This document shows, piece by piece, positions 7,618 through 25,619 of a stretch of 25,992 bases of DNA (position 1 is the stretch's first letter; every line of letters starts with the position of its first letter). The DNA is taken from the sequence record MT446416.1. The stretch is one strand, 5' to 3'. The translations under genes were made by a program, and so were the position numbers. Below the pieces are notes generated by a model that was given only the letters and a program-made list of their open reading frames with translations, ran no database searches and was not told where the DNA came from.

Positions 7618-7648
7618 AACAACCACTCCATGTCAGTGTCGTAATGAA

Positions 7649-8996: not shown

Positions 8997-9027
8997 CTGT
9001 GTTGTTACATTCACTATAATGTACCTT

Positions 9028-9057: not shown

Positions 9058-9082
9058 CAAAAATTATAATCCATAAAAATAT

Positions 9083-9769: not shown

Positions 9770-9809
9770 ATAGAAAGTCCTTTTTGTCATATATGCACTA
9801 TTTATTTTA

Positions 9810-10742: not shown

Positions 10743-10745
10743 CCT

Positions 10746-11057: not shown

Positions 11058-11271
11058 TATATTTTCCAATCCCAAATCGCTTGGAGATTTTCACAAGTAC
11101 AGATTCATCACAACGAATACTAGCAGTATCATTGGTTGAACTGTACTTTAATGGGGTCCACTGTAATTGAGATTCTTCTAGGAACTTGATACATCTGAAA
11201 TAATCTTTTAAGGAAAGAAATTTAACTACTGACATATCCTGAACAATACTATGCTGAACTTCAACTTTCAT
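11035..11271 (-). CDS. hypothetical protein
   Basis: 78-aa ORF with GGAG SD. Confidence 0.7.
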   Translation of the reverse strand: MKVEVQHSIVQDMSVVKFLSLKDYFRCIKFLEESQLQWTPLKYSSTNDTASIRCDESVLVKISKRFGIGKYNDKQCTK

Positions 11272-11280
11272 ATGAACTCC

Positions 11281-11538
11281 TTATAGTGGGTCGAATTTAT
11301 TTTCACGTTTCGATGTATAGCGAGTTACATCATGTATTCTCGGCTTAACATCTTTTGGTTTCCTTTTCTTCTTGTATTCAGTACTACTACACCCGAAAGT
11401 ATTCTCGATTCGTTTCTTACTAATCTTCACACCTTTCTTAGAGCGTTTGTGCTGTAATTCATCGATTTCTTCTTGTATTTTCCTGAATTCTGTCGGAGAA
11501 AGGGAACCGTCATTTTTATACTTAGGTTTAGCCATCAC
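11281..11538 (-). CDS. small very basic (K/R-rich) hypothetical protein
   Basis: 85 aa, many K/R; AAGGAG SD before a GTG start. Confidence 0.7.
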   Translation of the reverse strand: MMAKPKYKNDGSLSPTEFRKIQEEIDELQHKRSKKGVKISKKRIENTFGCSSTEYKKKRKPKDVKPRIHDVTRYTSKRENKFDPL

Positions 11539-11564
11539 TTCTCCTTGTGCTAGGCTAGATAGTA

Positions 11565-12707: not shown

Positions 12708-12967
12708 TTTATTACCTCTATATCTACATCTGTGCCATAGTAGGAAACGTAACCATTATCTGACTTACATTGAATTGATAACTCTGATTCATAGTATGTT
12801 ACTTTGATCACTGTTAGTACTTTTTCTTCAATTTCTCCCGTTAAATAATCCATTTCACGAACACGAACGTTGGTTCCTTTTGGGAGTTCTTGTGCAATTT
12901 TATTAACAAGTTCAAAAGCAGCTTCTTCAAGTGTGTGCAACAATTGCAATCTATCTTGGATATTCAT
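12704..12967 (-). CDS. hypothetical protein (helix + beta-domain small family)
   Basis: Start moved to ATG 12967 just after the upstream stop. Confidence 0.75.
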   Translation of the reverse strand: MNIQDRLQLLHTLEEAAFELVNKIAQELPKGTNVRVREMDYLTGEIEEKVLTVIKVTYYESELSIQCKSDNGYVSYYGTDVDIEVIK

Positions 12968-12968
12968 A

Positions 12969-13658
12969 TTATTTCCACCAAGTTGTATCTCGACCACCAG
13001 ACAAAGATTCATTGTACTGATGCCTGAAATTAGTATTTGGATTATTTGTCATTGTACTAATAAAATCAAATTTAACATTCTCTTGAATGTAATTAATAAC
13101 ATTATCTTTAAATTTAATAGTACTGAAGTCTAAATCTAAATGTTCATACAATACCGGATGACAAAACTCATGTGTACGCAATGATGGCATGGTATCCTTA
13201 ATGTATTGCACAGTGTTAATCATTGCATTATATTCAGGCATAGCACGCATCATCATTAGCTGAAAGTGTTCTTCCTCTGACATTGATTCATCCAAATCAA
13301 TAACGACTTCATCATTTTTAGAGTCAAATACTTTAATGTCACTCTTTGTTGGATCAAGCATAGCCCACTCTGGATACAGGCATGTTTTCCAAAAAGGATT
13401 ATTGCACTGAAACATACTAATGAGATTTTGATCTTTATCAAAAATAGCAAATCCAAGATCCGAACTTGGCTGTACTTCACATACACAAATATCGTAAGGA
13501 GATTCTTCAGTACTGAATGATCCAACTACATTTGATATATGTGAATATGGAGTTTCTCTTGATTTTAATTCAAAGGCTCTCTCCATACGATTAACCTGTG
13601 GTTGTAATGTAATTACACCCCTCAGTACATATAAAATTCTATCTAAATCTTTAATCAA
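12969..13658 (-). CDS. hypothetical protein with an EEEHFQL motif
   Basis: 229-aa ORF. Confidence 0.8.
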   Translation of the reverse strand: MIKDLDRILYVLRGVITLQPQVNRMERAFELKSRETPYSHISNVVGSFSTEESPYDICVCEVQPSSDLGFAIFDKDQNLISMFQCNNPFWKTCLYPEWAMLDPTKSDIKVFDSKNDEVVIDLDESMSEEEHFQLMMMRAMPEYNAMINTVQYIKDTMPSLRTHEFCHPVLYEHLDLDFSTIKFKDNVINYIQENVKFDFISTMTNNPNTNFRHQYNESLSGGRDTTWWK

Positions 13659-14233
13659 AATTCTATCCCCGTATCGGTTAATTTCGTTCCGTCCATATAC
13701 TTAACAATTATTTCAATGCGTCGATCAGTACTCATTTTTTGAAGATCATTGTAGTACAATTTAAATTCTTCAAAGAACTCAAGTGGTGGAATATCGTATA
13801 AAGTACTAATCTGGAAGTGCTCATGTAATCCAAAATCCAATATATCAATCTTAGGTATAAGTCCATCGGCTGCTGCACCTTCTGGTGTACTGCTGTCTGC
13901 TACATAAAACATAGAATTACCATGACGCTGGATAACGAATACGCAATCATCTTCACTTATATAAATCATATTTCCAAGGCATGGATCGTTATCACACCAA
14001 TTGTCATGGACGAATTGATCAACTTGAAGTAAATCGTGTATAATTCCTCGACCACTATCATCGATTCTAATATGTAAACCAGAATCACTTTTGCTCAACC
14101 AGCGGTATTTTGAATCACATCCTGATTCCATAACTGGATATTTTGAAAAATTCATATCAGTACCATTATAAAACCAATCGTGCCACTCATTACGCATACT
14201 AATCAGCTTAGTACTTAATTCTAATACATTCAT
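13655..14233 (-). CDS. hypothetical protein with an EHFQI motif
   Basis: 192-aa ORF. Confidence 0.8.
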   Translation of the reverse strand: MNVLELSTKLISMRNEWHDWFYNGTDMNFSKYPVMESGCDSKYRWLSKSDSGLHIRIDDSGRGIIHDLLQVDQFVHDNWCDNDPCLGNMIYISEDDCVFVIQRHGNSMFYVADSSTPEGAAADGLIPKIDILDFGLHEHFQISTLYDIPPLEFFEEFKLYYNDLQKMSTDRRIEIIVKYMDGTKLTDTGIEF

Positions 14234-14240
14234 TTTAGTT

Positions 14241-14543
14241 TTATCCTCTTAGTTTAATAGTACTGGCTGGATAATCTACCATAGTACTATCTGGTAATCC
14301 TATACAGTAATAAGGAAAATATCCCATCTTTATATTAATACCAATTAACATTCCAGTTTTATATGAAGTATTAATTTCATAGTGGTCGTCTATATCAACT
14401 GCCAGTCCATATAAGGATATATTACAATCCTTGATGTATCGTTCAAAGATTTTATACATTGATGGGTATAAAGTTCCATTGGATTCTTTTACTACATCAG
14501 CCAACAACTTTATAGTACTGTTAATTAAATCTATACTGAGCAT
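14241..14543 (-). CDS. hypothetical protein (helix + beta-domain small family)
   Basis: 100-aa ORF. Confidence 0.7.
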   Translation of the reverse strand: MLSIDLINSTIKLLADVVKESNGTLYPSMYKIFERYIKDCNISLYGLAVDIDDHYEINTSYKTGMLIGINIKMGYFPYYCIGLPDSTMVDYPASTIKLRG

Positions 14544-14556
14544 CTTTGTACCTGCG

Positions 14557-14580
14557 AAAAAAGACCAGCAAACGCTGGCC
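14557..14580 (-). terminator. intrinsic terminator
   Basis: GGCCAGC-gttt-GCTGGTC followed by TTTTTT. Confidence 0.8.
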
Positions 14581-14587
14581 TATATTT

Positions 14588-14872
14588 TTATTTTAACTCA
14601 CTACAAGTGTATATACCGACAGTATCATCAGAAAATGTAATATAGAAATACACACCACGGGTATCAAATGAAATTTCATCAATTGTACCTGTTTTATTCA
14701 TAGTCTTATGTGTAACTTCTTTATTCACATAAAGGTATAAACTATTAAATTCCTTTGAATATTCATCAATCATATTGCTAAAATAATTGCAGTATGACAT
14801 ATCAGTATTATAAATTTCATTATACAAAGAAATATACTGGTAGAATGTCCAAGCATGTGAGTTAAAATCCAT
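14588..14872 (-). CDS. hypothetical protein (helix + beta-domain small family)
   Basis: 94-aa ORF with AGGA SD. Confidence 0.75.
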   Translation of the reverse strand: MDFNSHAWTFYQYISLYNEIYNTDMSYCNYFSNMIDEYSKEFNSLYLYVNKEVTHKTMNKTGTIDEISFDTRGVYFYITFSDDTVGIYTCSELK

Positions 14873-14881
14873 AACAGTTCC

Positions 14882-15610
14882 TTAGAAATATACCATACCC
14901 ATCAATTCTGAATCTTCAGGGCGAGTATAACCTTGTTTCTTAACTTTAAAGTAGAAGGATTCATTATCTTCTAAATTATAACGTTTCTTTAAGCAACGGG
15001 TGTATGTTTGGCAATTAGGTGAAACCCATTCATAAACATGAACACCATTTTCATCATAACCATTAATACTACAACGGTTTCCTTCGTGTTTCTTGAAGTT
15101 TTTACTCTTCTCAGTGAATTCTTTTACCGATGTAGTGGATGGTTTTTTATATTCAAATGGAACTTCTGTTATACGAAAATAGAAATATTGGTCGTCTTCA
15201 TCATATCCAACTAGCACTGTGTTAGTTTCACGTACATTGTAATGATTCTTACTTTTCAATTCATTTTCATATATATCTTTTAATACCTCATCGAATACAA
15301 TATCACTTGCTGCATTTGGGTCTGAAACCCCACTAATACGGCGTTCAATAATAAAATCGGTGAATTTGCGGTCTTCTGAAATATCTTCATTCATATAAAG
15401 ACTTACGAACTTATCCTTGTATGTCTTTACGCTATATTGTTTGCTTTGAACTTCACTATAAACATCAGCTAACATGTTAGCTTGTCCACATTGTATACCG
15501 CTAGATGAATATGCCGCAGCATGTTCAGCCATAACAGATGTTAACATTTGGAAATTTGCAATATTGAGTTGATTCGCCATTTCTGTTGCAAATTTTATAT
15601 TATCTATCAT
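14882..15610 (-). CDS. hypothetical protein
   Basis: 242-aa ORF with AAGGA SD. Confidence 0.8.
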   Translation of the reverse strand: MIDNIKFATEMANQLNIANFQMLTSVMAEHAAAYSSSGIQCGQANMLADVYSEVQSKQYSVKTYKDKFVSLYMNEDISEDRKFTDFIIERRISGVSDPNAASDIVFDEVLKDIYENELKSKNHYNVRETNTVLVGYDEDDQYFYFRITEVPFEYKKPSTTSVKEFTEKSKNFKKHEGNRCSINGYDENGVHVYEWVSPNCQTYTRCLKKRYNLEDNESFYFKVKKQGYTRPEDSELMGMVYF

Positions 15611-15635
15611 TTCACATTCCTTGTGTTTATGATTT

Positions 15636-16568
15636 TCATATTTTTAATTTATTTTCGAGTAAACATTTACATACATAATCAATAACAAGATTTATGTCTT
15701 GTAAATCAAATGTTTCAGTATACCCATCACCAAAATAATCCTTTGGCAATTTACTACTATTTTTAAGCAGATTTAAAATATTATATTCTACACTTTTAAT
15801 AACTTCGGTATTTCCAGTAAAATAATATAATTCCTCTACTATAAAATTAGTTTTTGACCTAATACTAATTAGTCTTGATTTATCAATCTTTGTAGAAATA
15901 CCAACTTTATATTTTATTAAAATATTTTGTTCATATATTCCTAAAATATATAATTTACTTTCTTCTGGGATTGGTCTGATACAATTGCAGTTAAGAGATC
16001 CACATTTAACTCTACTATAATTAATATATTTGTCAAAATTACACGCTGTACAATAAAATCTAACCTTATATTGTGTACCACGGTATGTAGATTTATCCAT
16101 ATATATTGTATTTGAGTAATCTTTTATTTTATTCATAATAGTGTTATATGCTTCGTCGATATCTAACGGCATACAATATGATGAATGACATTTACAATAT
16201 GAACCTCTAGACTTAACATCATGCACCGTCATATATCTTTCAAACGCACAATCGTCACAATAAAATCTAGATTTGTTTTTTGTAGTTGTGAATGTGGAAA
16301 TATCTAATTTTAATTTTGAATTAATTTCACCCAATTTATTATATAAAGTTTTAAATGTGGGACAGTGACAAAATATTCCATTTTTGTACACATTCCTAAC
16401 TATGATATTTTTACTAAACCCACATTCATCACAGAAAAAAGTTGATTTGTTTGATATGGTAGTGTATGTTGTTCTATCCATTTTTACCGATGAACCAATT
16501 GAACTCAATTTTTCATCAACCAGTCTGAATACTTCAGAATCTGGCTTTTTACTTGGCACTTTACACAC
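15636..16568 (-). CDS. Zn-finger-repeat free-standing endonuclease-like protein (T5orf172/GIY-YIG-like C-terminus)
   Basis: Three CxxC...CxC repeats, LYI...KVGIS...SRL, DGYTETF; start may be GTG 16559. Confidence 0.7.
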   Translation of the reverse strand: MCKVPSKKPDSEVFRLVDEKLSSIGSSVKMDRTTYTTISNKSTFFCDECGFSKNIIVRNVYKNGIFCHCPTFKTLYNKLGEINSKLKLDISTFTTTKNKSRFYCDDCAFERYMTVHDVKSRGSYCKCHSSYCMPLDIDEAYNTIMNKIKDYSNTIYMDKSTYRGTQYKVRFYCTACNFDKYINYSRVKCGSLNCNCIRPIPEESKLYILGIYEQNILIKYKVGISTKIDKSRLISIRSKTNFIVEELYYFTGNTEVIKSVEYNILNLLKNSSKLPKDYFGDGYTETFDLQDINLVIDYVCKCLLENKLKI

Positions 16569-16599
16569 TCCTTGTGTTAGTTATTGTTCCTCATCCAAT

Positions 16600-16625
16600 A
16601 TTATATCACTACTTGAGCCATTGTC
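16600..16625 (-). promoter_or_regulatory. promoter GACA-N16-TATAAT with TGn extended -10
   Basis: Minus strand GGGACA atggctcaagtagTGA TATAAT. Confidence 0.65.
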
Positions 16626-16920
16626 CCGCTTTGTAACAATAAAGATTCTCAAATTTAAAGTTCTCTATATCACATTCCTCACGTACTCGATTCTTGTTCC
16701 AGAATAAAATACGAATCCTTTCATAATCACGATAAACACTAATAATGCTTCTGTGTTTAGATTTATAATATTCTTTTACAATATCAAGATACATTGACCT
16801 AAGTAACGATTTCACTGGATAAGACAAATCCTGTGCCGTAGTAATAAAGTAAATCATCTTCATTGTTTCAGCAATAAGAACTTCATTTGTTGTATTTGTC
16901 ATTGTAATCCTTACATACAC
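16609..16920 (-). CDS. hypothetical protein
   Basis: 103-aa ORF; start uncertain (possibly 16902). Confidence 0.65.
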   Translation of the reverse strand: MYVRITMTNTTNEVLIAETMKMIYFITTAQDLSYPVKSLLRSMYLDIVKEYYKSKHRSIISVYRDYERIRILFWNKNRVREECDIENFKFENLYCYKAGQWLK

Positions 16921-17065
16921 TATGTAAAGTAAATCCTAAACCAACACCAACAATTGGGAATAGTAAATTAACATACCATGTGTTCATTGTTAAAAAGGAA
17001 TAAGCACCTGAAGCTGTCAGTACTGCAATAGAAAAAAGACTCCAGATAAAAAATAATGCTCTCAT
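16883..17065 (-). CDS. small two-TM membrane protein
   Basis: 60 aa with two hydrophobic helices. Confidence 0.7.
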   Translation of the reverse strand: MRALFFIWSLFSIAVLTASGAYSFLTMNTWYVNLLFPIVGVGLGFTLHSVCKDYNDKYNK

Positions 17066-17352
17066 AAAAATGTTACCTCGTTAGATGAGTAGTTACGATA
17101 TATTTGTGAATTATGTTCCACACCATGAATTGTTATATGCCCGTTGTAGAAAAAAGTAATATCTACAACTTTGAGTTCTTTACGTTTTTTAGTACTGAAA
17201 TATCTACCCACTAACGCAGCATATATATAATCCCTGTACTCTTGAGTAATGAATTTATACATATTATGATTTGCACTACACTTTTCATCATAAGTATTAG
17301 TATATTCTTTCATCAGTAGAGCATATGTTTTTTGTATTAATATGATATTCAT
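17062..17352 (-). CDS. hypothetical protein, divergent member of the QFTYK family
   Basis: N-terminus MNIILIQKTY; beta-rich C-terminus. Confidence 0.7.
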   Translation of the reverse strand: MNIILIQKTYALLMKEYTNTYDEKCSANHNMYKFITQEYRDYIYAALVGRYFSTKKRKELKVVDITFFYNGHITIHGVEHNSQIYRNYSSNEVTFL

Positions 17353-17624
17353 CTGTAGTTTAATATTGAAATGGGAAGACTATATATATGTGCGTAAAGT
17401 TTATCAACTCTTTCCATATTCACTTTTAAAGTACTTCCAATACGACTGATGCTATCTATACGATAAAGCACGTCATTCAGCATCATTACGGTATCGGTGT
17501 AATCTTCACTAAGAGATTCAATGTAGATATCTTCAAGTTTCACATCCATGCGTGGTATATCTAAATCCCTCAATAAACGCAGTGTTTGCACGATCAGTTC
17601 AGCTTTAGTAATGAATACGCTCAC
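17349..17624 (-). CDS. hypothetical protein (start uncertain)
   Basis: ORF 17349..17735 overlaps the next gene heavily; GTG 17624 gives a plausible ~91-aa product. Confidence 0.55.
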   Translation of the reverse strand: MSVFITKAELIVQTLRLLRDLDIPRMDVKLEDIYIESLSEDYTDTVMMLNDVLYRIDSISRIGSTLKVNMERVDKLYAHIYSLPISILNYR

Positions 17625-17805
17625 ATGCCAGACAATAAATGCACTCAATGTCAGGTCGCCATGATTTATCGAAATCTTTGTGCTGTTCTTCAGTGTATTC
17701 CGCATCATCATTGATAGGAAAGAAATCCCCAGCACCAGAGGCCCAGTCTGAATCTAAACGGAAACGAGCTAATTGAGTACTGTTGCAATATGGACATTTA
17801 TTCAA
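17605..17805 (-). CDS. small zinc-ribbon protein
   Basis: CPYC near the N-terminus and CIYCLAC near the C-terminus; AAGGA SD. Confidence 0.7.
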   Translation of the reverse strand: MNKCPYCNSTQLARFRLDSDWASGAGDFFPINDDAEYTEEQHKDFDKSWRPDIECIYCLACERIHY

Positions 17806-18082
17806 AATTTATTCCTTCTAACTGATATACGTTTAATGAAAATGACCCACTATTATTATCGCATCTGAAACACAGTGTTAAAGAACCATTATAACTCACG
17901 ACATCCGTACATATACATTTTTCACCATTGGATATGATAGATTTTCCTATATATAAATCTCTTACTATAGTACGGTAATGTTGCCATAAAAAATAATACA
18001 CACTTTCATAGTACTCATCTTTTACATATGACAAGTATAAGAATTTATAAAATACTTGTATTTCCTTTAAGTTGTTTTTCAT
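17798..18082 (-). CDS. QFTYK-family paralogue
   Basis: EIQVFYKFLY...VVSYNGSLTL. Confidence 0.75.
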   Translation of the reverse strand: MKNNLKEIQVFYKFLYLSYVKDEYYESVYYFLWQHYRTIVRDLYIGKSIISNGEKCICTDVVSYNGSLTLCFRCDNNSGSFSLNVYQLEGINFE

Positions 18083-18356
18083 TCTCCAACTCCAGTAAAT
18101 TTACACCAATCCAATCAACATCACTATCAGTACTTAATTCCAATCGTAGCTTACCGCTATGACTAACAATATCGCGGAATTTGTATATTTTATTATCACG
18201 AACTATACACAAATCATGGTAATATTCATGTAATTCATCCAAAAACTTTATCCATACCGAACGATAGATTTCACCGTAGAGATATTCTCCAGCATCAACC
18301 GTAGCGTATTGGATATACAAAAATTTGTATGTGAATTGTATATCATTAATATTCAT
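18045..18356 (-). CDS. QFTYK-family paralogue
   Basis: DIQFTYKFLY...IVSHSGKLRL. Confidence 0.75.
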   Translation of the reverse strand: MNINDIQFTYKFLYIQYATVDAGEYLYGEIYRSVWIKFLDELHEYYHDLCIVRDNKIYKFRDIVSHSGKLRLELSTDSDVDWIGVNLLELENEKQLKGNTSIL

Positions 18357-18366
18357 ATGTCAACTC

Positions 18367-18678
18367 TTATAGGTCCGTTAACTTCAAAACTTTGATCTCC
18401 ATAAATTCCCTATCAGTTTTTTCAAGAAATTCTACATGGATAATACCTTGATAAGATTTTACACCTGAATATTCAAATATGTCATCTCCATCAGTGTAAG
18501 TACTGTAATTCTTTTTTATATATTCAGCAATAGAATCTAAGTAATCATAGTAATTATTAATAAATGGTGATTCTTTTGATTCGACATGTTCACCAATCTT
18601 CCCACTAAAAAGATACATGTCATACAAACCATATATATTTTTATACGTGAATTGAACATCATTCAAATTTAATTTCAA
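18367..18678 (-). CDS. QFTYK-family paralogue
   Basis: DVQFTYKNIY...VKSYQGIIHV. Confidence 0.75.
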   Translation of the reverse strand: MKLNLNDVQFTYKNIYGLYDMYLFSGKIGEHVESKESPFINNYYDYLDSIAEYIKKNYSTYTDGDDIFEYSGVKSYQGIIHVEFLEKTDREFMEIKVLKLTDL

Positions 18679-18935
18679 GGGAATATCTCCAGAGGAACAC
18701 TCGTAAATCCAAAATCAGTGTAGAACTGTACCTCTACTTTACCATCGAGCTTAATGATTATATCTGAAAATTCTGCATGATCGTTGTTGATAATTACAGT
18801 ACTGAATTTTTCTTTAATCCTCTCACGCACAGTATTAATCATTTCAATACATGTATTTTCTAAAAATATACTATTATTTTTATCTGCTAGGTCACGAATG
18901 CACTTGAATGTTAATTGGAAATCTTTATAATTCAT
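18675..18935 (-). CDS. QFTYK-family paralogue
   Basis: DFQLTFKCI...IIKLDGKVEV. Confidence 0.75.
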   Translation of the reverse strand: MNYKDFQLTFKCIRDLADKNNSIFLENTCIEMINTVRERIKEKFSTVIINNDHAEFSDIIIKLDGKVEVQFYTDFGFTSVPLEIFP

Positions 18936-19201
18936 ATATTCACCAAATCAACAGAGAATAAGTCGTTATCAAATTTATATGAAAGTACTAATCTACCATC
19001 AAAACTATCGACACTAAGTATCTTTCGTTTTTTCCCATTAATGAAAATTTCAGTATCAATAAAATACTCACGTAATTCTTCTAGGTAATTTGACCATAAT
19101 TTATGAGTAAACGCATATTTATTAATTGTGTTAGTACTTCTGTGATTATGGTGTAATTTAAATAATTCCATATAAGTGAATTGTATATGTTTGTAATTCA
19201 T
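18932..19201 (-). CDS. QFTYK-family paralogue
   Basis: HIQFTYMELF...VDSFDGRLVL. Confidence 0.75.
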   Translation of the reverse strand: MNYKHIQFTYMELFKLHHNHRSTNTINKYAFTHKLWSNYLEELREYFIDTEIFINGKKRKILSVDSFDGRLVLSYKFDNDLFSVDLVNI

Positions 19202-19213
19202 ATTTCCCCTTAC

Positions 19214-19242
19214 AAAAATAGCCCGAACTTATGTCGGGCTAT
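19214..19242 (-). terminator. intrinsic terminator
   Basis: ATAGCCCGA-cataagt-TCGGGCTAT followed by TTTT. Confidence 0.85.
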
Positions 19243-19247
19243 ATGTG

Positions 19248-19865
19248 TTATTCATCGTCATCATCATCGTCGTCGAGATCTAGGTAAATGCCATCATCAC
19301 CATCATCGAAGTACTCAACCACTACACCAGGAATGTTCAGTGCTGTGAACATCGCATCATATTTTTCATCAGATGGGATAAGAACAAACTCATCAATACT
19401 TTGAATTTCAGGCATACGATCTTCAGGAATACCCATTTGCAACAAGGATTGGATGATTTTTTCCTTGTATTCTAGGAACTTCTCTTCTGATTCGAAATCC
19501 ATAATAAGTTGTGCTACATAACCATCTTCGTTACCAAATGCGATTGACATTTGTGCATCAGTACCGACATATGACCATGTACGCTTGCCAGTATTTTTCT
19601 CAATGAAGTTCTGAATTTCAAGAACGATTTCATGACGAGAACTATTGGCAATGTTGTTAAGGTTAGCAACACCAGCAATAATTTCTGAACTATCATTGGA
19701 TTCTTCGAATGTACCATAGTCACCTAATACATATTGAACACCATCACAATGTAATGCATATGCATAATCCAAATCAGCAAGTGAATCACACTTACCACGG
19801 ATTGGGCGTAGGGAAAGCCCTAGGCGAAGATAACGAAAGTATGTATTAGTATTTGTATTTGTCAA
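19248..19865 (-). CDS. acidic protein with a poly-Asp C-terminal tail
   Basis: Ends DDGDDGIYLDLDDDDDDDE; probable TTG start 19865 behind TAAGGAG. Confidence 0.75.
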   Translation of the reverse strand: MTNTNTNTYFRYLRLGLSLRPIRGKCDSLADLDYAYALHCDGVQYVLGDYGTFEESNDSSEIIAGVANLNNIANSSRHEIVLEIQNFIEKNTGKRTWSYVGTDAQMSIAFGNEDGYVAQLIMDFESEEKFLEYKEKIIQSLLQMGIPEDRMPEIQSIDEFVLIPSDEKYDAMFTALNIPGVVVEYFDDGDDGIYLDLDDDDDDDE

Positions 19866-20133
19866 CGTAATGCTCCTTAACAATATAAAAGTAGTTGCTG
19901 TTGTTGTCAAAAAAGATGACTAATCCTTTGTAGACATTTACACCAATCTTGATTTGGCATATTTTATTCGATTTACAAGCCTCAGTCAATAACATCTTGT
20001 GCTCTTTACTGAAAGTGTGGAATAGTGGTTTTACATGCCACATCTCCACACCATCTAGTACTGGAAAATGTTCACTGAATTTGATCATTGATTCTTGTAA
20101 AAAATAACCTGTTAGATTCGAATCATCAGACAT
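19846..20133 (-). CDS. hypothetical protein
   Basis: Likely start ATG 20133 overlapping the upstream stop. Confidence 0.7.
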   Translation of the reverse strand: MSDDSNLTGYFLQESMIKFSEHFPVLDGVEMWHVKPLFHTFSKEHKMLLTEACKSNKICQIKIGVNVYKGLVIFFDNNSNYFYIVKEHYVDKYKY

Positions 20134-20419
20134 GTAAGTTCGCCAGGAAGTCAATTACTTCTTCATGTGTTAACTTATCACTACGCTCTAGAACATTGAT
20201 GATGAATGGTGTTTGACTATATAATTCAGCCAGAAACGCAACTTCATCAGATGTATAAGAATATCCCATAGGAACAACTTGTGCAGTCCAGTTTCCTAAA
20301 GTTTTGTTTGCAATGATTGCAACCACCGTATTACCTTTGAATTCAACATGGATTGAACGGAAACCCGAATCCTCATTCTGATCCCAAAGTACTGGGTTAG
20401 TTTTAAACAGTACTGACAT
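20126..20419 (-). CDS. hypothetical protein
   Basis: 97-aa ORF with GAGG SD. Confidence 0.75.
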   Translation of the reverse strand: MSVLFKTNPVLWDQNEDSGFRSIHVEFKGNTVVAIIANKTLGNWTAQVVPMGYSYTSDEVAFLAELYSQTPFIINVLERSDKLTHEEVIDFLANLHV

Positions 20420-20421
20420 AG

Positions 20422-20955
20422 TTATTTCCTCATGTATTTTATTACATCTTCAAATAGTTTAGTTTTCAGTGCATCATCATTACCAGGTAGAAAAGTACTG
20501 AAGCTATTAAAATCTTCATTCTTGGCAAACTCACGCATCTGTGTGGAACTGTAGCGACTTACATTTCGGTCAATTCCAGCTTGAACTGCCTTGATTGAAC
20601 AAAAATTATATAACTTCCCATTGTACGTGTCAAGCGTTTTTTGGAATGGTTCAAGTCTGTCTGAACCACATATGAAAAGAACATCTAAGTACTTTCCATC
20701 CAGTTCTCTCATTATATCAAACAGATTATCTTCTGTATAGATATTTTCTTGTACAGATGGGTAAAATCCTTCTGTATAGTACATTTTCAGTTCAGGAGGT
20801 AATGGGTTTTTGACGGCATCAGTACTGGTACTAAGGAATATTTTCAAATCAGCATTGTACTGTTCTTGTAGTGCTTGGGCTTTTTCAAACACTAAACCAT
20901 GTCCATTGTGGACTGGGTTACATCTCATGAATGTCACTACGCATGTTTCTTTCAT
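20422..20955 (-). CDS. cytidylyltransferase-like (HxGH) nucleotidyltransferase
   Basis: RCNPVHNGH, KNPL, GSDR, SSTQMR motifs of the CTP_transf-like family; substrate unknown. Confidence 0.8.
   Translation of the reverse strand: MKETCVVTFMRCNPVHNGHGLVFEKAQALQEQYNADLKIFLSTSTDAVKNPLPPELKMYYTEGFYPSVQENIYTEDNLFDIMRELDGKYLDVLFICGSDRLEPFQKTLDTYNGKLYNFCSIKAVQAGIDRNVSRYSSTQMREFAKNEDFNSFSTFLPGNDDALKTKLFEDVIKYMRK
20605..20633 (-). promoter_or_regulatory. perfect sigma70 consensus promoter inside the nucleotidyltransferase CDS
   Basis: TTGACA cgtacaatgggaagtta (17 nt) TATAAT. Confidence 0.55.
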
Positions 20956-21476
20956 ATGTTCTTCATCACCTGACCAAGAGATTTAAGATAGTTGATTTTA
21001 GCTGGAGTCAAATACTTATCCAGTACTATTAAACAACTAGGGAATGGAGCACTGTCCGTCTTTTTATCTGGTTCTTCAGGGATACCGAATTTTAAGCGAC
21101 CTTTTATAAAACAAATACAGTCGCATTCTTTTGATGCATAGTTCTGAAACGCAACCGTATCGGTACGTGAAGGTACAAGTATCAGTACTGTAGCACCTTT
21201 GTTATATGCATCAACTGCCTTAGATAACCACGTTTTCAAATCACTGTACGGTGGGTTGAGCCACACGATATTGTTTCCCCAGTCCTGTTCAAGTGAATTG
21301 TCTTCTGGTGTAAAGAACTTATCACACAATGCTGTTTCTTTAACACATGCTGCATCTAGTGTAAATTCCCAGAGTTCATCCAAATCTTCAAAGAAATCCT
21401 TTGGAGTAGTCCAGTTATCTTTTCCAGTACTGAAATGTACTGATTGTTTTTTCTTCGAAGCATCCTTCTTCGACAT
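20952..21476 (-). CDS. phage Dam-family DNA N6-adenine methyltransferase (PF05869-like)
   Basis: WTTP..FF, FTLDAAC, WLNPPY, LVPSRTDT, FIKGRLKF; target specificity cannot be read from the sequence. Confidence 0.9.
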   Translation of the reverse strand: MSKKDASKKKQSVHFSTGKDNWTTPKDFFEDLDELWEFTLDAACVKETALCDKFFTPEDNSLEQDWGNNIVWLNPPYSDLKTWLSKAVDAYNKGATVLILVPSRTDTVAFQNYASKECDCICFIKGRLKFGIPEEPDKKTDSAPFPSCLIVLDKYLTPAKINYLKSLGQVMKNI

Positions 21477-21492
21477 ACATAATTTCCTTTGA

Positions 21493-22038
21493 TTATAGAC
21501 AGTTAAGTACTATGTCATCAAAAGTACTACTGTCAATGTTGTATTCATATAAAAATTTAAAATGTGATCCATAACGCATCATCAGATTAAACTCTTCTTC
21601 AGTATTAAATTTGTAATCATGAAGAGTTTCAAGGGTACATGTTAAACCTAAAAACTCAATAATTTCTGATGTTACATCATTTCCTGAATTGAAGTATTTA
21701 ACCCAAACACATTTTCCTTGTGGGTTGAATTTTCTATATTCTCCTTCTAGTTCTCCATTGACGATATGTGCTTTCGCACTGATTAGATTATTACTATAAC
21801 GCTCTTCGTAGTAGTTCCCATAACGAGCTTTAAGAATTGTAGGCTTCTTGGTTGGGAATAACTTAATGGAAGTTAATTCAAAACCGCACTGCAACTCTTT
21901 GATGTACGAAATACATCCCTTTTCTTTAATCACAACAAAACCAGTAAAATTCTCCTGGTCTTGGTTCTGATTGTCTGAATCAACAAATTCTAGTGTTTTA
22001 TAAGTGACGCTTTTAGATTTTTTAATAAATGACATCAT
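21493..22038 (-). CDS. hypothetical protein with a MORN-like repeat and an EEEFNL motif
   Basis: NGELEGEYRKFNPQG; start moved to ATG 22038 behind AGGA. Confidence 0.7.
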   Translation of the reverse strand: MMSFIKKSKSVTYKTLEFVDSDNQNQDQENFTGFVVIKEKGCISYIKELQCGFELTSIKLFPTKKPTILKARYGNYYEERYSNNLISAKAHIVNGELEGEYRKFNPQGKCVWVKYFNSGNDVTSEIIEFLGLTCTLETLHDYKFNTEEEFNLMMRYGSHFKFLYEYNIDSSTFDDIVLNCL

Positions 22039-22094
22039 TATTCCTATGGAAACATCAATGACTGTCCATGGCGTTGACTTCATCAACACCAGTC

Positions 22095-22125
22095 GAATTA
22101 TACACGCTTCGCATGTATAATTCAA
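22095..22125. promoter_or_regulatory. 13-bp hairpin containing a sigma70-like promoter on each strand
   Basis: GAATTATACACGC-ttc-GCATGTATAATTC; minus strand TTGAAT-17-TATAAT, plus strand TCGAAT-17-TATAAT. Confidence 0.55.
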
Positions 22126-22129
22126 CGAA

Positions 22130-22656
22130 AGTACTATGATTTGTTTTAATTAATATTGACGGGGTTTGCTTGAGCATATTTCATCCCCCCGCAGGGGAAA
22201 GAACAAAAAAGTTTGACGCTGGTGGCCTTCACATAGTTCATATCACGAATTCTCTTACGAGGCGAAAGCGGGTTGCTCTGTTTCTCTCTATCGCGGTTCT
22301 TGTAGCAACGGTCGTCGGTCTTAAACATCCCGACACATAATACAAATACCATATGACCAGTACTTGTATTTGATTTCACGAATTTTGGACGCAACTATTT
22401 TGTATAAATTACGACCGCAAATTTCTCATGAAATCTCCCTTAGATAATTGGTAAGGTGCGATCCTTATATGTCTATCGAGGAACTCTCTTTATCCTATTG
22501 GAGTTCTTTATACAGCCGCATTGCCGTGAGTGGTTCAAACTATGCCATCATCTAACGGGTTTCATTTGCTGTTCGTACTGAAAGGACTACTCATCTACCC
22601 TCTACTTTTCGAGTGGATTAGGCTTCAATCATTTCCATATGGAACCTTTCAGGATT
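22130..22656. ncRNA. candidate structured non-coding RNA or origin-like region, family not recognised
   Basis: Longest gene-free stretch, visibly more GC-rich, several hairpins, flanked by promoters. Confidence 0.4.
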
Positions 22657-22690
22657 AAAAAAAGGTGACAACATATTCTGCTGTCACCTT
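22657..22690 (-). terminator. intrinsic terminator overlapping a promoter start site
   Basis: AAGGTGACA-11 nt-TGTCACCTT followed by a T run. Confidence 0.8.
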
Positions 22691-22692
22691 AC

Positions 22693-22718
22693 ATTATATC
22701 ATAAACTTATGGTATGTC
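22693..22718 (-). promoter_or_regulatory. promoter GACA-N16-TATAAT with TGn extended -10
   Basis: Minus strand GAGACA taccataagtttaTGA TATAAT. Confidence 0.65.
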
Positions 22719-23582
22719 TCAGTTGTATTCTGTTTTTTCAGTGAAATTCGTTAAGATATCTGCACTTAAGCTTCTCATAACCTCAATCTTACTTGGCATG
22801 AACCTGTGCTTGTTTTTTACATACAACTCATCATCTTCAATGAAAGATGTGAACATGAATACCATATCTTCACGTGGAATTGAGAGAATATTACAGTTTT
22901 CATTTTCAGTAACAGGGGAATCCCCGTAGTACTTAGAGAATGCAGTACTTTGACGACCGATTATGATAGAATTTCGGATTAGAAAATTACTACAGTACTG
23001 AAAATCTTTGTAGTACTTGTCAAGGATATATGGCATTATCGCTTCTTTCACTTCTTCATATCCATTTGAACTATCAATTTCAGTACAATAATCTTCTCGG
23101 TCTTTTTTCCCTCGATGATTATCAAACTCGTACTCAAAGAATAAATTTTTATTTGATGAATCTGAATCATTTAAACCAACTGATCCACTATAGTATGAAT
23201 TTCGTGAATTTCTATCCTTCATTCGATCATCCGGGCATGATGCATACATAGAAATGTCATGTGTTGACGTACCGATATAAATTTTCTTAGTAATGTGATT
23301 GTACGCGATGTAATCATAATCTTGTACTCCAGTGAGCATTAACTGGAACATCAATTCATCAGGAACATCAATTAACGGGTACTCAAACTTCGAATATCTA
23401 CTACGACAGAAATTCTTTTCAAATGCTCGGTGTGCGATGAAATCTTTTAGATTTGTAATAGATTCATGCTCATGTGTATTACTGGTGCGTACATTGACAT
23501 TAGTAGACGAGCAATACCCTTCAGATTCTTCTGCGTAGACATAAAAACCCTTACTGTAGTCAACGATTAGATAAAGTTTCAT
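22719..23582 (-). CDS. hypothetical protein with a DELMFQL motif
   Basis: 287-aa ORF with GGAG SD. Confidence 0.8.
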   Translation of the reverse strand: MKLYLIVDYSKGFYVYAEESEGYCSSTNVNVRTSNTHEHESITNLKDFIAHRAFEKNFCRSRYSKFEYPLIDVPDELMFQLMLTGVQDYDYIAYNHITKKIYIGTSTHDISMYASCPDDRMKDRNSRNSYYSGSVGLNDSDSSNKNLFFEYEFDNHRGKKDREDYCTEIDSSNGYEEVKEAIMPYILDKYYKDFQYCSNFLIRNSIIIGRQSTAFSKYYGDSPVTENENCNILSIPREDMVFMFTSFIEDDELYVKNKHRFMPSKIEVMRSLSADILTNFTEKTEYN

Positions 23583-23594
23583 ATATCTCCAGAC

Positions 23595-23628
23595 AAAAAA
23601 AAGGACGAGATATTATATCCAGTCCTTT
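23595..23628 (-). terminator. intrinsic terminator with TATAAT in its loop
   Basis: AAAGGAC-tggatataatatctc-GTCCTTT followed by a T run. Confidence 0.7.
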
Positions 23629-23634
23629 GGTTTA

Positions 23635-23940
23635 TTAGTGGCTTGCCCAGCAGTAAACAGGACGTAGATTTTCCATTGGGTTTACTTCAGGCTTCAGTAC
23701 TGTAACACGAACTTCATACGGAGTACCATCTGCATGATGGAACGTTTCGTAATGAATACTCTCAATGAAGGTTTCATATTCTTCTTGAGAACGTGAACGA
23801 ACTGATGGGGAATATTTCTTTTTGGTATCTGATTTTAGCGTAACACTTACTAGTTCTGTTTCTTCACCTTCTTCAAGTTTATTGAAATCGAACTCTGGTA
23901 CACCTTCAAACATATCAAATTTCATTCCGTTGTCTTCCAT
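23635..23940 (-). CDS. hypothetical protein
   Basis: 101-aa ORF with AAGGA SD. Confidence 0.8.
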   Translation of the reverse strand: MEDNGMKFDMFEGVPEFDFNKLEEGEETELVSVTLKSDTKKKYSPSVRSRSQEEYETFIESIHYETFHHADGTPYEVRVTVLKPEVNPMENLRPVYCWASH

Positions 23941-23991
23941 TTTAAATTCCTTTTTATATAATGTTAGTTAGATAGTTTTTAATAAATCAGA

Positions 23992-24378
23992 TTAGATTAC
24001 GTCATACGGTAGAGTACCGTGACGGAATTTATCAAGTTGTGCAAGAACTTCTTTACGTTCGACAATCTCTGGCACATCTTCTTGCAGTTGGTCACATACT
24101 TCAACGATGAAATCCCAATCGCTCTCACAACTCACACGTACTGCTTCAATTGTTTTCCAATCAGCACTAATTTCACCTTCAGGATTTACATACGAAGGCC
24201 ATACCTTTCCATAGTCTTGTACTGATTTGTCGTTAAGAACACGAATAGCATTGAAAATCTGTCCAGTACTGAAGTGTTTAGTATTCTTCATGTCTTCTAA
24301 GCAACATAGCTTAGGTTCACCCTGGACTTCAATCAGAAGTACACCACCAATCGCTTTTAGAACAGAACTTGTATTCAT
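23992..24378 (-). CDS. hypothetical protein with its own promoter
   Basis: 128-aa ORF with GGAG SD. Confidence 0.8.
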   Translation of the reverse strand: MNTSSVLKAIGGVLLIEVQGEPKLCCLEDMKNTKHFSTGQIFNAIRVLNDKSVQDYGKVWPSYVNPEGEISADWKTIEAVRVSCESDWDFIVEVCDQLQEDVPEIVERKEVLAQLDKFRHGTLPYDVI

Positions 24379-24413
24379 CTATATCTCCATTTATCAAAAA
24401 AAAAGATGTGAAC

Positions 24414-24439
24414 ATTATATCACAAGGAATTGTTATGTC
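24414..24439 (-). promoter_or_regulatory. promoter GACA-N16-TATAAT with TGn extended -10 and a TGTGA-N8-TCACA palindrome
   Basis: Minus strand TGGACA taacaattccttgTGA TATAAT gtTCACATC followed by T9. Confidence 0.7.
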
Positions 24440-24451
24440 CACAATATTTTA

Positions 24452-24745
24452 TCAAATAGTCAAACTTTCGTGCCAGTTATTGAAATCGTTAATAGCCAGC
24501 ATAAACATATTCTCATCATTAAATTCTAGAATATGTTCATTGTATAAGTAGCTAATGTACTTATTACTACAGTGTTTGCTATTCATAATTAGCATTTCAA
24601 CTGCACGTTCATACGAACATGGGCTGAGATACAATTTTGTTCCATCAGGATGCTCAATCTCCACTGCACCAGGTGGAATAAAACGTTCACCAGTATAAGG
24701 GATATACGGTTCTGTTTTGAAAATAAGTTTGAATTTAGTATCCAT
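24452..24745 (-). CDS. hypothetical protein
   Basis: 97-aa ORF with GGAGG SD. Confidence 0.75.
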   Translation of the reverse strand: MDTKFKLIFKTEPYIPYTGERFIPPGAVEIEHPDGTKLYLSPCSYERAVEMLIMNSKHCSNKYISYLYNEHILEFNDENMFMLAINDFNNWHESLTI

Positions 24746-24761
24746 ACCAAATCCTCCATAA

Positions 24762-25619
24762 TTACATTGTTTCTTTTATGTTGCACAACATAGTATTAAC
24801 TATGTTCATCTTCCCGCCTAACTTGAAGTAATATTCCAATTTATTAATAATATTACTTTTTAATATCTCAAATAGTTGATATTCATTTGTTTCGAAACCA
24901 AGTTCGAATTGAAAAGTATATAAATTGTTGAATAGATGTACTAAAGATGCATCCGGTGAATGCATTGTAAATGTGTAGTTGGCACGATAACCAGTACTAA
25001 TCACTACTTCTGATATATCACCTTTCATGTATATGTCAATATTGTACATCATTGGTCTGCCTGTTGCAATATCTTTCATGCGAAAGAATGCAGTGCTACG
25101 ATAAACAACACCTTCTTCTGTAACTTTTTCTTGAATAGTGATATTTGAAACGTCACTCTCTTTGAATTTGGACTCGAATGAATGTGTGTAGCTTGTTTTT
25201 TCATTATCCGCGTGCATAGTACATGTGTACTTTCCAAAATCATCTCTAGATGTATATGATTTATCACTGGCGGTTTTATAGAACGAAACCCCATTGATGT
25301 GTTCTTCTTTGTACATCATAGTGTCATTGGATTTGTAGTATGAACAATTAGGTGTTGAAAGAGATTCAAAAATGTTCACATCATGACAGTAAGAAATAGA
25401 AGAATCGCTATACAGTACTACATCACGAATTGCAACTTCTTTTGAAGTACCTTTTTTGACAGAAATTTGAAAGTCATTGCATGGGAAGATTCTATATCCA
25501 TCGTATGTATCTGATGTACTGATGCCAAATGGTGTTGGGGAATTTAGAAATTCGTTGATATGTTCAAGTACTGAATACTTTTTGAAATTGCGAAAGTCAG
25601 TGCTATCTAACATATACAA
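24762..25619 (-). CDS. hypothetical protein
   Basis: 285-aa ORF with GGAG SD. Confidence 0.8.
   Translation of the reverse strand: MYMLDSTDFRNFKKYSVLEHINEFLNSPTPFGISTSDTYDGYRIFPCNDFQISVKKGTSKEVAIRDVVLYSDSSISYCHDVNIFESLSTPNCSYYKSNDTMMYKEEHINGVSFYKTASDKSYTSRDDFGKYTCTMHADNEKTSYTHSFESKFKESDVSNITIQEKVTEEGVVYRSTAFFRMKDIATGRPMMYNIDIYMKGDISEVVISTGYRANYTFTMHSPDASLVHLFNNLYTFQFELGFETNEYQLFEILKSNIINKLEYYFKLGGKMNIVNTMLCNIKETM

What the first reader, a model, noticed from the sequence alone, without database searches (positions are those of the whole stretch)
20422..21476. Phage Dam-family methyltransferase (with adjacent HxGH nucleotidyltransferase) sits in the densest AGTACT patch and may be its writer
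Seen: an NPPY methyltransferase overlapping (ATGA) a cytidylyltransferase-like gene, with 11 AGTACT sites between 20057 and 21528, three inside the MTase gene. Established: PF05869-type phage MTases make N6-methyladenine; characterised members such as T1 Dam target GATC. Inference: this enzyme may have a new specificity (AGTACT or GTAC), and motif plus enzyme may form an undescribed phage epigenetic system. Any role for the nucleotidyltransferase (further base modification, or an unrelated NAD/FAD-type activity) is open.
Basis: inference. Interest (0 to 1): 0.68.

Follow-up and report, generated by a model that had tools for sequence, protein, structure and literature searches.

The report
AGTACT-rich jumbo phage and its methylase
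The two genes are a real small adenine DNA methylase and a nucleotidyltransferase of a RaK2-like jumbo coliphage. The AGTACT excess around them is a selected feature of the whole genome and the whole phage clade, with about 1,000 sites per genome, and whether this methylase marks those sites is plausible but unproven.

Summary
The window is Escherichia virus TH47 (Asteriusvirus, a RaK2-like jumbo phage).

**Genes.** Both are as described. A 174-aa PF05869 (T1-Dam family) NPPY methyltransferase overlaps, by ATGA, a 177-aa HxGH/SSTxxR nucleotidyltransferase.

**Local patch.** All 11 AGTACT sites are present. This is the densest stretch in the window, but random placement of the window's 73 sites gives a cluster this dense with P=0.21.

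**The real signal.**
- AGTACT is 7-13 times over-represented across whole genomes (937-1,356 sites) in six RaK2-like phages from four or more genera.
- It falls in all three reading frames (68 sites in genes against 14 after synonymous-codon shuffling).
- 86% of sites are conserved between TH47 and PBECO4, against 51% for control hexamers.
- It is densest in the terminal-repeat early region, where it sits inside sigma-70-type promoters.
- I found no paper describing it.

**Link to the methylase (circumstantial).**
- PF05869 is the only one of five informative DNA-methylase families present in all five enriched genomes searched for all of them.
- It is absent from three AGTACT-poor jumbo relatives.
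- This amounts to one phylogenetic event.
- 77 other viral contigs with 38-48% identical methylases avoid AGTACT.
- The nucleotidyltransferase linkage is loose.

I put the chance that this enzyme methylates AGTACT or GTAC at about 0.35.

The parts
20952..21476 (-). Orphan N6-adenine DNA methyltransferase, 174 aa, T1-Dam family (PF05869)
   Evidence: Pfam PF05869 E 3.5e-33, 115 bits against a cut-off of 28.1. phrog_111 'DNA methyltransferase' E 5.5e-57. TIGR01712 scores 95.3 bits, just under its 97.05 cut-off. Conserved at 42-97% identity in RaK2-like phages.
21246..21257 (-). Codons of the catalytic NPPY motif (residues 74-77)
   Evidence: N74, P75, P76 and Y77 are invariant in an 8-sequence alignment that includes Staphylococcus, Acinetobacter and Lactococcus phage homologues.
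20422..20955 (-). HxGH nucleotidyltransferase (cytidylyl/adenylyltransferase superfamily), 177 aa
   Evidence: phrog_3041 'cytidyltransferase' E 1.5e-53. No Pfam hit at E<=0.01. Weak NadD/TIGR00125 hits over the HxGH region only. AlphaFold model pLDDT 82. Best folds are PPAT/CoaD and NaMN/NMN adenylyltransferases, TM 0.5-0.55, E 5e-5. Protein-atlas neighbours are viral CTP_transf_like clusters.
20899..20910 (-). HNGH (HxGH) nucleotide-binding motif, residues 16-19
   Evidence: H16, G18 and H19 are invariant in 11 homologues.
20533..20550 (-). SSTQMR (ISSTxxR-like) motif, residues 136-141
   Evidence: S136, S137, M140 and R141 are invariant. That this motif marks the family is from my own knowledge of HxGH nucleotidyltransferases.
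20952..20955 (-). ATGA overlap of the methylase stop codon and the nucleotidyltransferase start codon
   Evidence: The minus strand at 20960..20945 reads AACATATGAAAGAAAC.
21493..22125 (-). Conserved upstream neighbour, 210 aa as the tool lists it (TTG start), function unknown
   Evidence: phrog_16210 E 2e-81. No Pfam hit. A gene of 172-203 aa sits directly upstream of the methylase in RaK2, BF, XaC1 and GAP32. I did not test whether these are homologues.
20126..20419 (-). Conserved downstream neighbour, 97 aa, function unknown
   Evidence: phrog_14956 E 1e-43. A gene of about 93-96 aa follows the nucleotidyltransferase in RaK2, BF and GAP32. I did not test whether these are homologues.
21492..21528 (-). 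Sigma-70-like promoter match (TTGATG-18-TATAAT) just upstream of the methylase start. One AGTACT lies in the spacer (21506) and one abuts the -35 (21523).
   Evidence: Consensus scan, 10 of 12 matches. This is a pattern match only. The offsets differ from those of the terminal-repeat promoters.
20057..21528 (.).
   Evidence: Listed. Densest stretch of the window, but P(max>=11)=0.21 under random placement.
993..25572 (.). All 73 AGTACT sites of the window, part of a genome-wide array of about 1,000 sites
   Evidence: 73 sites against 6.5 expected. By reading frame: 35 as Ser-Thr, 23 as xxA-Val-Leu, 10 as xAG-Tyr-Txx, and 5 between genes. 68 sites in genes against 14.3 +/- 3.5 after synonymous shuffling. 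AGTACT is the only palindromic hexamer enriched.

Best explanation
SHOWN. The locus encodes a small, intact, orphan T1-Dam-family N6-adenine DNA methyltransferase. It overlaps by ATGA, which suggests translational coupling, an HxGH nucleotidyltransferase, in a gene block whose order is kept across RaK2-like jumbo phages. The window is Escherichia virus TH47. AGTACT, with a weak preference for C before and G after it, is a DNA-level signal kept by selection over the whole roughly 350-kb genome and the whole clade. It is not a feature of this locus.

INFERRED, as the most likely working model. The methylase acts on replicating phage DNA and methylates an adenine in AGTACT or its GTAC core. About 1,000 ScaI-type sites would otherwise be a large restriction liability. 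The high, 4-mer-like site density then serves as a mark of phage DNA, read by a factor not yet identified. The likeliest reader is a phage-encoded dimeric DNA-binding protein, because the signal persists across hosts from Xanthomonas to E. coli.

The nucleotidyltransferase is most likely an adenylyltransferase of nucleotide-cofactor metabolism and is not part of the DNA mark.
For: - **Identity.** 100% match to TH47. PF05869 with an intact NPPY and conserved motifs.
- **Motif excess in the window.** 73 against 6.5 expected.
- **Whole-record counts against the reversed pattern.** 1125/149, 937/142, 1072/152 and 1356/130; 1011/169; 1235/187.
- **Not a codon effect.** 68 against 14.3 after synonymous shuffling, and 35 of 60 Ser-Thr pairs are written AGT-ACT against 13% expected. 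Ser-Thr and Val-Leu dipeptides are themselves in excess, while Thr-Ser matches expectation and Leu-Val falls below it.
- **Selection.** 44 of 51 sites are kept between TH47 and PBECO4, against 51% for same-composition hexamers, P about 1e-7. Sites sit at the same alignment columns of the methylase gene in BF, XaC1 and GAP32 despite amino-acid changes.
- **Candidate writer.** PF05869 is in all six enriched genomes. PF00145 is in three of the five searched, PF01555 in two of five, and PF02086 and PF02384 in none. XaC1 has PF05869 only.
- **Outgroups.** PA5oct, Atu_ph07 and XacN1 lack both the excess and PF05869.
- **Room for a different specificity.** The clade's methylases carry their own insertion after GRLKF and a C-terminal extension not seen in T1 Dam or the small-phage homologues.
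- **Restriction pressure on AGTACT is real.** XacN1 has 0 sites against 127 for the control pattern.
- **Promoter placement.** AGTACT peaks at -27 and -7 relative to TATAAT.
Against: - No methylation data exist. Only assembled contigs of public runs were on offer.
- The co-occurrence is a single clade, so it counts as one event.
- Characterised PF05869 enzymes (T1 Dam, VT2 Dam) target GATC. This is from my own knowledge.
- The closest homologues outside the clade (38-48% identity) sit in genomes that avoid AGTACT. The aggregate is 87 against 262 expected over 77 contigs, and four small phages show no excess.
- A 174-aa enzyme with no separate target-recognition domain would be unusually small for 6-bp specificity. 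This is inference.
- No reader protein was identified.
- Any dimeric DNA-binding protein could explain a palindromic motif equally well.
- The fixed promoter positions may reflect duplication of promoter cassettes rather than function.
Confidence: 0.4

Rival explanations
1. The methylase has nothing to do with AGTACT. It is an ordinary phage anti-restriction or Dam-like enzyme with GATC, another short motif, or relaxed specificity. AGTACT is the binding site of some other phage-encoded dimeric protein, such as an early-gene repressor, a nucleoid or packaging protein, or a replication factor. The clade-level co-occurrence is coincidence of shared ancestry.
For: - Known family members target GATC (my own knowledge).
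- Homologous methylases in 77 other viral contigs and four small phages go with AGTACT avoidance or no excess.
- The patch at the gene is not significant.
- AGTACT sits at fixed positions in early promoters, as an operator would.
- These genomes hold hundreds of proteins of unknown function.
Against: - GATC is under-represented (O/E 0.51) rather than neutral, as it might be if self-protected. This point is weak.
- No other DNA-methylase family is shared by all enriched genomes, yet about 1,000 ScaI-type sites need some protection.
- No candidate binding protein was found.
Confidence: 0.4
2. The AGTACT excess is a by-product of a biased mutation or repair process, in the manner of Vsr/Dcm very-short-patch repair that inflates CCWGG in E. 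coli. It is not a functional signal.
For: Biased repair can mimic both over-representation and apparent site conservation. The E. coli precedent is from my own knowledge.
Against: - No one-mismatch neighbour of AGTACT is strongly depleted. The lowest, AGGACT/AGTCCT, has O/E 0.45, inside the 5th-95th percentile range of all hexamers.
- Ser-Thr and Val-Leu dipeptides are enriched at the protein level.
- Density is higher still in non-coding early regions, at defined promoter positions.
- m6A is not a deamination hazard (my own knowledge).
Confidence: 0.07
3. The methylase-like protein and the nucleotidyltransferase form one pathway that attaches a larger, nucleotide-activated group to adenine in AGTACT. 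This would be DNA hypermodification rather than plain methylation.
For: - The ATGA overlap, and the two genes adjacent or nearly so in PBECO4, RaK2, GAP32 and BF.
- The clade already has a separate NMNAT-Nudix gene and a Nampt gene for NAD salvage, so the small enzyme is a second HxGH protein without an assigned job (PMC5259590).
Against: - Linkage is loose. Four genes separate the pair in XaC1 and one inserted gene in L117. L116 has no nucleotidyltransferase within 10 kb although that contig is AGTACT-rich.
- The methylase has the ordinary SAM-dependent NPPY architecture.
- No glycosyl- or acyl-transferase lies in the block.
Confidence: 0.05
4. The excess is a codon-usage or amino-acid-composition artefact.
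For: AGT, ACT, GTA and CTN are common codons in this AT-rich genome.
Against: - Synonymous shuffling that keeps proteins and codon usage gives 14.3 +/- 3.5 (maximum 25) against 68 observed.
- Sites occur in all three frames and between genes.
- The non-coding density in the early region is 10 per kb.
Confidence: 0.01

Closest known systems
Phage T1 Dam / Stx-phage M.EcoVT2Dam (PF05869 small phage N6-adenine methyltransferases)
   Same: Same Pfam family. Same NPPY and GRLKF/APFPS core. Orphan phage enzyme with no partner nuclease annotated beside it.
   Different: Only about 31% identical to T1 Dam. It lacks T1's insertions and has its own loop after GRLKF plus a C-terminal extension. Its specificity is unknown. 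T1's genome shows no AGTACT excess (3 against 25 for the control pattern).
Genome-wide over-represented short motifs with a dedicated reader (Neisseria DUS, Haemophilus USS, Chi, KOPS)
   Same: Hundreds to thousands of copies. Found inside genes in any frame. Kept by selection. Density far above chance.
   Different: Those motifs are asymmetric, 8-12 bp long and cellular. This one is a 6-bp palindrome in a virus, conserved across phage genera with different hosts, and its reader is unknown.
Dam/GATC epigenetics (SeqA, MutH, methylation-sensitive promoters such as Mu mom, IS10 and P1 cre)
   Same: A palindromic adenine-containing site at 4-mer-like density (one per about 330 bp), an orphan adenine methylase, and sites overlapping -35/-10 regions of promoters.
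   Different: Methylation of AGTACT is not shown. No SeqA- or MutH-like reader was looked for or found. GATC in E. coli is not 8-fold enriched genome-wide.
Vsr/Dcm very-short-patch repair (CCWGG inflation)
   Same: A methylase-associated process that raises the count of its own target.
   Different: Its signature, a depleted one-off neighbour, is absent here.
PPAT (CoaD) and NMN/NaMN adenylyltransferases (HxGH nucleotidyltransferases)
   Same: HxGH and ISSTxxR-like motifs. Rossmann-like fold with best PDB matches to PPAT and NadD/NMNAT.
   Different: TM is only 0.5-0.55 and identity 11-20%. It falls below all Pfam and NCBIfam cut-offs. The substrate is unknown. The clade has a separate NMNAT-Nudix gene.

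Membership tests
PF05869 Dam (phage N6-adenine DNA methyltransferase) | Profile match above the curated gathering score | tested here: met
   115.1 bits against a 28.1 cut-off, covering profile positions 7-154 of 169.
PF05869 Dam (phage N6-adenine DNA methyltransferase) | Catalytic (D/N)PPY motif IV intact | tested here: met
   N74-P-P-Y77, invariant in the 8-sequence alignment.
PF05869 Dam (phage N6-adenine DNA methyltransferase) | Makes N6-methyladenine in DNA | not testable with these tools
   Needs an enzyme assay or a methylome. Only assembled contigs were available from public runs.
T1-Dam-type GATC specificity | Methylates GATC | not testable with these tools
   Only 31% identical to T1 Dam, with different insertions. 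GATC O/E is 0.51 in the genome, which does not settle the question.
NCBIfam TIGR01712 phage_N6A_met (equivalog) | Score above the curated cut-off | tested here: not met
   95.3 bits against a 97.05 cut-off. This is a marginal miss, so family level is yes and equivalog is not assured.
Type II restriction-modification system | A cognate endonuclease gene next to the methylase | tested here: not met
   Both flanking ORFs have no Pfam hit and belong to PHROG families of unknown function. The neighbours are kept in the same order across the clade. An unrecognised nuclease cannot be excluded.
   All six enriched genomes have it and three non-enriched jumbo relatives lack it, but this is one clade. 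77 contigs and four small phages with 31-48% identical homologues show no excess.
PF01467 CTP_transf_like / HxGH nucleotidyltransferase superfamily | Profile match above cut-off | tested here: not met
   No Pfam family at E<=0.01. TIGR00125 scores 15.2 bits against 27.7. A relative in L118 carries a weak PF01467 hit, and atlas neighbours carry PF01467.
PF01467 CTP_transf_like / HxGH nucleotidyltransferase superfamily | HxGH and ISSTxxR-type motifs, Rossmann-like fold | tested here: met
   H16xGH19 and S136STxMR141 are invariant. Foldseek matches PPAT, NadD and NMNAT at probability 1.0, E 5e-5 to 1e-3, TM 0.5-0.55.
NMN adenylyltransferase (NAD salvage) | Equivalog-level match or substrate evidence | tested here: not met
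   TIGR00482 scores 17.5 bits against 112. The clade has a separate NMNAT-Nudix gene and a Nampt gene.

The most novel reading that the evidence does not exclude
RaK2-like jumbo phages carry a sequence-level identity code made of two parts: about 1,000 copies of AGTACT, and not one copy of GCGC. The PF05869 methylase writes m6A on AGTACT. A phage factor reads the dense mark to tell phage DNA from host DNA and to switch the AGTACT-bearing early promoters of the terminal repeat. The absence of GCGC lets a phage-borne GCGC-directed nuclease destroy host DNA safely.
Probability: 0.2. Interest if true: 0.85.

Novelty: new variant of a known kind. Interest (0 to 1): 0.68.

Why it matters
Phage genomes normally avoid short palindromes. 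Here one palindrome is held at 7-13 times expectation under purifying selection. This holds across phage genera that infect E. coli, Klebsiella, Cronobacter, Pectobacterium, Serratia and Xanthomonas, and the selection is strong enough to shift dipeptide usage in the proteins. That implies an unknown sequence-specific reader or writer that is central to this clade's biology.

The question is directly testable with a ScaI digest or one long-read methylome of a phage that many laboratories already hold. If the small methylase is the writer, it would be a new specificity for the T1-Dam family and one of the smallest 6-bp-specific methylases. It would also give a handle on early-gene control in a group of therapeutic-candidate jumbo phages.

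Tried and rejected
- **Direct methylation evidence from public reads.** All 24 runs on offer are kept only as assembled contigs, so I did not use read laying.
- **Error-prone assemblies as a proxy for modification.** Salmonella phage SD-6_S16 has a fragmented methylase gene. It keeps normal AGTACT density (79 sites in 24 kb), and its differences from PBECO4 are mainly deletions, not errors centred on the motif. Uninformative.
- **Hia5, Hin1523 and other non-specific adenine methylases as relatives.** The paper places them with Dam/DpnM/T4 Dam (DPPY enzymes), not with this family. Dropped.
- **PDB by sequence.** No meaningful match for either protein.
- **Literature.** Eight full-text searches (AGTACT with phage or jumbo terms, ScaI/RsaI with clade names, PF05869, Asteriusvirus) found no description of the motif excess or of the enzyme's specificity. 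The RaK2, CBB and Sharanji papers do not mention it.
- **Very-short-patch-like repair signature.** Absent.
- **Periodicity of sites.** There is only a modest excess at spacings of 20-23 bp, explained by promoter pairs.
- **MT-A70 (PF05063).** The search found nothing, but its controls did not ring either, so it gives no information.
- **Whole-record count of GCGC.** I counted it in fetched sequence instead.

Full report
**Identity of the window.** A 2.4-kb stretch around the finding matches Escherichia virus TH47 (MT446416) at 100%. It matches other Asteriusvirus jumbo phages of 348-386 kb at 83-98%. Every ORF of 101 aa or more in the window lies on the minus strand.

**The two genes.**
- ORF 20952-21476(-) encodes 174 aa and matches Pfam PF05869 (phage Dam) at E 3.5e-33. 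It also matches phrog_111. It misses the TIGR01712 equivalog cut-off by 2 bits.
- Its NPPY motif (residues 74-77), an FxLDxA block, GRLKF and APFPS are conserved with homologues from RaK2, Serratia phage BF, Xanthomonas phage XaC1, GAP32, Staphylococcus phage 52A, Acinetobacter phage AP22 and a Lactococcus phage.
- Compared with T1 Dam (31% identity), the jumbo-phage enzymes lack T1's insertions. They carry their own loop after GRLKF and a C-terminal extension. A different specificity is therefore possible, but it cannot be read from sequence.
- ORF 20422-20955(-) encodes 177 aa with invariant H16xGH19 and S136STxMR141. It matches PHROG 'cytidyltransferase' families but no Pfam model.
- Its model (pLDDT 82) resembles PPAT and NaMN/NMN adenylyltransferases only at superfamily level (TM 0.5-0.55). 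Its atlas neighbours are viral CTP_transf_like clusters.
- The genes overlap by ATGA.

**The motif in the window.**
- AGTACT occurs 73 times against 6.5 +/- 2.7 in dinucleotide-preserving shuffles.
- It is the only palindromic hexamer in excess. The next has 16 copies, and 25 of the 64 have none.
- Sites fall in all three frames: 35 as Ser-Thr, 23 as xxA-Val-Leu, 10 as xAG-Tyr-Txx, and 5 between genes.
- Shuffling synonymous codons, which keeps proteins and codon usage, gives 14.3 +/- 3.5 against 68 observed. Of 60 Ser-Thr pairs, 35 are spelled AGT-ACT where 13% is expected.
- Ser-Thr (60 against 33.7 expected) and Val-Leu (63 against 40.6) are themselves in excess. Thr-Ser matches its expectation (34 against 33.7) and Leu-Val falls below it (33 against 40.6).
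- This is a DNA-level signal strong enough to shape protein sequences.

**The 'densest patch'.** The 11 sites between 20057 and 21528 are all present, with three in each of the two genes. That stretch is the maximum for this window. Random placement of 73 sites gives a maximum of 11 or more in 21% of trials. The window's density equals the genome average. Co-location of the methylase with the patch carries no weight.

**Genome-wide and clade-wide scale.**

| Phage | AGTACT sites | Reversed control pattern |
|---|---|---|
| vB_Ec-M-J | 1125 | 149 |
| RaK2 | 937 | 142 |
| Serratia BF | 1072 | 152 |
| Xanthomonas XaC1 | 1356 | 130 |
| GAP32 | 1011 | 169 |
| Pectobacterium CBB | 1235 | 187 |

- Three metagenomic RaK2-like contigs are also enriched: 56 against 6.8 expected, 45 against 3.9, and 24 against 4.1.
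- In the full vB_Ec-M-J genome the density is 1-4 per kb everywhere. It rises to about 6.6 per kb in a roughly 27-kb zone of tiny genes that includes the 21.5-kb direct terminal repeat. XaC1 shows the same doubling in its first 40 kb.
- In that zone non-coding DNA carries 10 sites per kb. AGTACT sits at two fixed places in sigma-70-type promoters: abutting the -35 (AGTACTTGCAA) and just before an extended -10 (AGTACTgTATAAT). These are peaks at -27 and -7 from TATAAT. The promoters resemble each other, so shared descent may explain the fixed positions.
- They account for under 5% of all sites.

**Selection on the sites.**
- Between TH47 and PBECO4 (87% nucleotide identity over 16.6 kb), 44 of 51 AGTACT sites are kept. 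The figure is 51% for hexamers of the same composition, P about 1e-7.
- In the methylase gene, BF, XaC1 and GAP32 share sites at the same two alignment columns although the encoded residues differ.
- No one-mismatch neighbour is notably depleted. That argues against a repair-driven origin.

**Is this methylase the writer?**

*For:*
- Of the DNA-methylase families searched in five enriched genomes, only PF05869 is in all. PF00145 is in three, PF01555 in two, and PF02086 and PF02384 in none. XaC1 has PF05869 alone.
- The jumbo relatives PA5oct, Atu_ph07 and XacN1 have neither the gene nor the excess: 15 against 40 for the control, 25 against 82, and 0 against 127.
- XacN1's total avoidance shows that AGTACT-directed restriction is a real pressure. 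A phage with a thousand sites therefore needs protection.

*Against:*
- All of this is one clade and so one evolutionary event.
- Homologues at 38-48% identity in 77 other viral contigs go with AGTACT avoidance (87 against 262 expected).
- Phages 52A, AP22, 8V08 and T1 show no excess.
- The characterised family members target GATC (my own knowledge).
- No reads suitable for detecting methylation were available.

I put the probability that the enzyme methylates AGTACT or GTAC at about 0.35.

**The nucleotidyltransferase.**
- The pair overlaps or is adjacent in Asteriusvirus, RaK2 and GAP32, and is close in BF.
- Four genes separate them in XaC1 and one inserted gene in a metagenomic relative.
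- No copy lies within 10 kb of the methylase in another AGTACT-rich contig.
- GAP32 carries a separate NMNAT-Nudix gene and a Nampt gene, and the CBB paper reports possible NMN adenylyltransferases and a Nampt. The small enzyme is therefore a second HxGH protein of unknown substrate.
- A joint modification pathway is unlikely. I give it about 0.05.

**Literature.** The RaK2 paper notes two methylases and broad restriction resistance, with data not shown, but no motif. The CBB and Sharanji papers describe RpoD-like early promoters and a terminal repeat of about 20 kb, but no AGTACT excess. No paper in the searchable library links AGTACT to phage genome composition.

**Verdict.** AGTACT is kept by selection in about 1,000 copies per genome in all six RaK2-like genomes counted, and GCGC is absent from every member examined.

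Noticed in passing
whole window; loci L009-L027 (vB_Ec-M-J), L120-L137 (XaC1), L002, L003, L005, L116: GCGC is completely absent from RaK2-like genomes. Counts are 0 against 354 expected in 357 kb of vB_Ec-M-J, 0 against 327 in all of XaC1, and 0 against 19.8 in the window. It is also 0 in 40-kb samples of RaK2, BF and GAP32 and in a metagenomic relative. The outgroup PA5oct has 53 in 41 kb. GGTACC and CGTACG are also at zero in vB_Ec-M-J. This suggests a GCGC-directed nuclease, from phage or host, acting across all hosts.
   Followed up: partly
OQ718158.1 351.8-378.6 kb and 1-21.5 kb (loci L028, L009, L010): There is a 21.5-kb direct terminal repeat, plus an adjoining zone of 60-130-aa genes. 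Many of these genes follow a sigma-70-type promoter and a stem-loop. AGTACT density there is 6.6 per kb overall and 10 per kb in non-coding DNA, with the motif at -27 and -7 from TATAAT.
   Followed up: partly
AP018399.1 (Xanthomonas phage XacN1), whole record: There are no AGTACT sites in 385 kb, against 127 for the reversed control pattern. This is the opposite extreme to XaC1, which also infects Xanthomonas and has 1,356 sites.
   Followed up: no
window 2376-4389 and 3461-4876(-): TH47's DNA ligase is only 62-66% identical in protein to the ligases of other Asteriusvirus phages, although flanking DNA is 93-98% identical. There is no nucleotide match to vB_Ec-M-J over 2377-4388. This looks like a mosaic replacement.
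   Followed up: no
window, all minus-strand ORFs: Ser-Thr (60 against 33.7 expected) and Val-Leu (63 against 40.6) dipeptides are in excess. Thr-Ser matches its expectation and Leu-Val falls below it. Selection for the DNA motif has shifted protein sequences.
   Followed up: yes
L007 (Salmonella phage SD-6_S16, OR699182.1): The record is about 30 kb shorter than its relatives. Many genes, the methylase among them, are broken by deletions relative to PBECO4, while AGTACT density is normal. It is probably an assembly-quality problem rather than a natural knock-out.
   Followed up: partly
L005 28007-31213 (GAP32_112, GAP32_114): A bifunctional NMNAT/ADP-ribose pyrophosphatase-like gene and a nicotinamide phosphoribosyltransferase gene lie about 22 kb from the methylase block. 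NAD salvage in the clade therefore does not depend on the small nucleotidyltransferase.
   Followed up: no
L116 12145-13326, L117 4735-5841: Metagenomic RaK2-like contigs carry a PF26128 (Gad2) gene a few genes downstream of the methylase. I did not look at it further.
   Followed up: no
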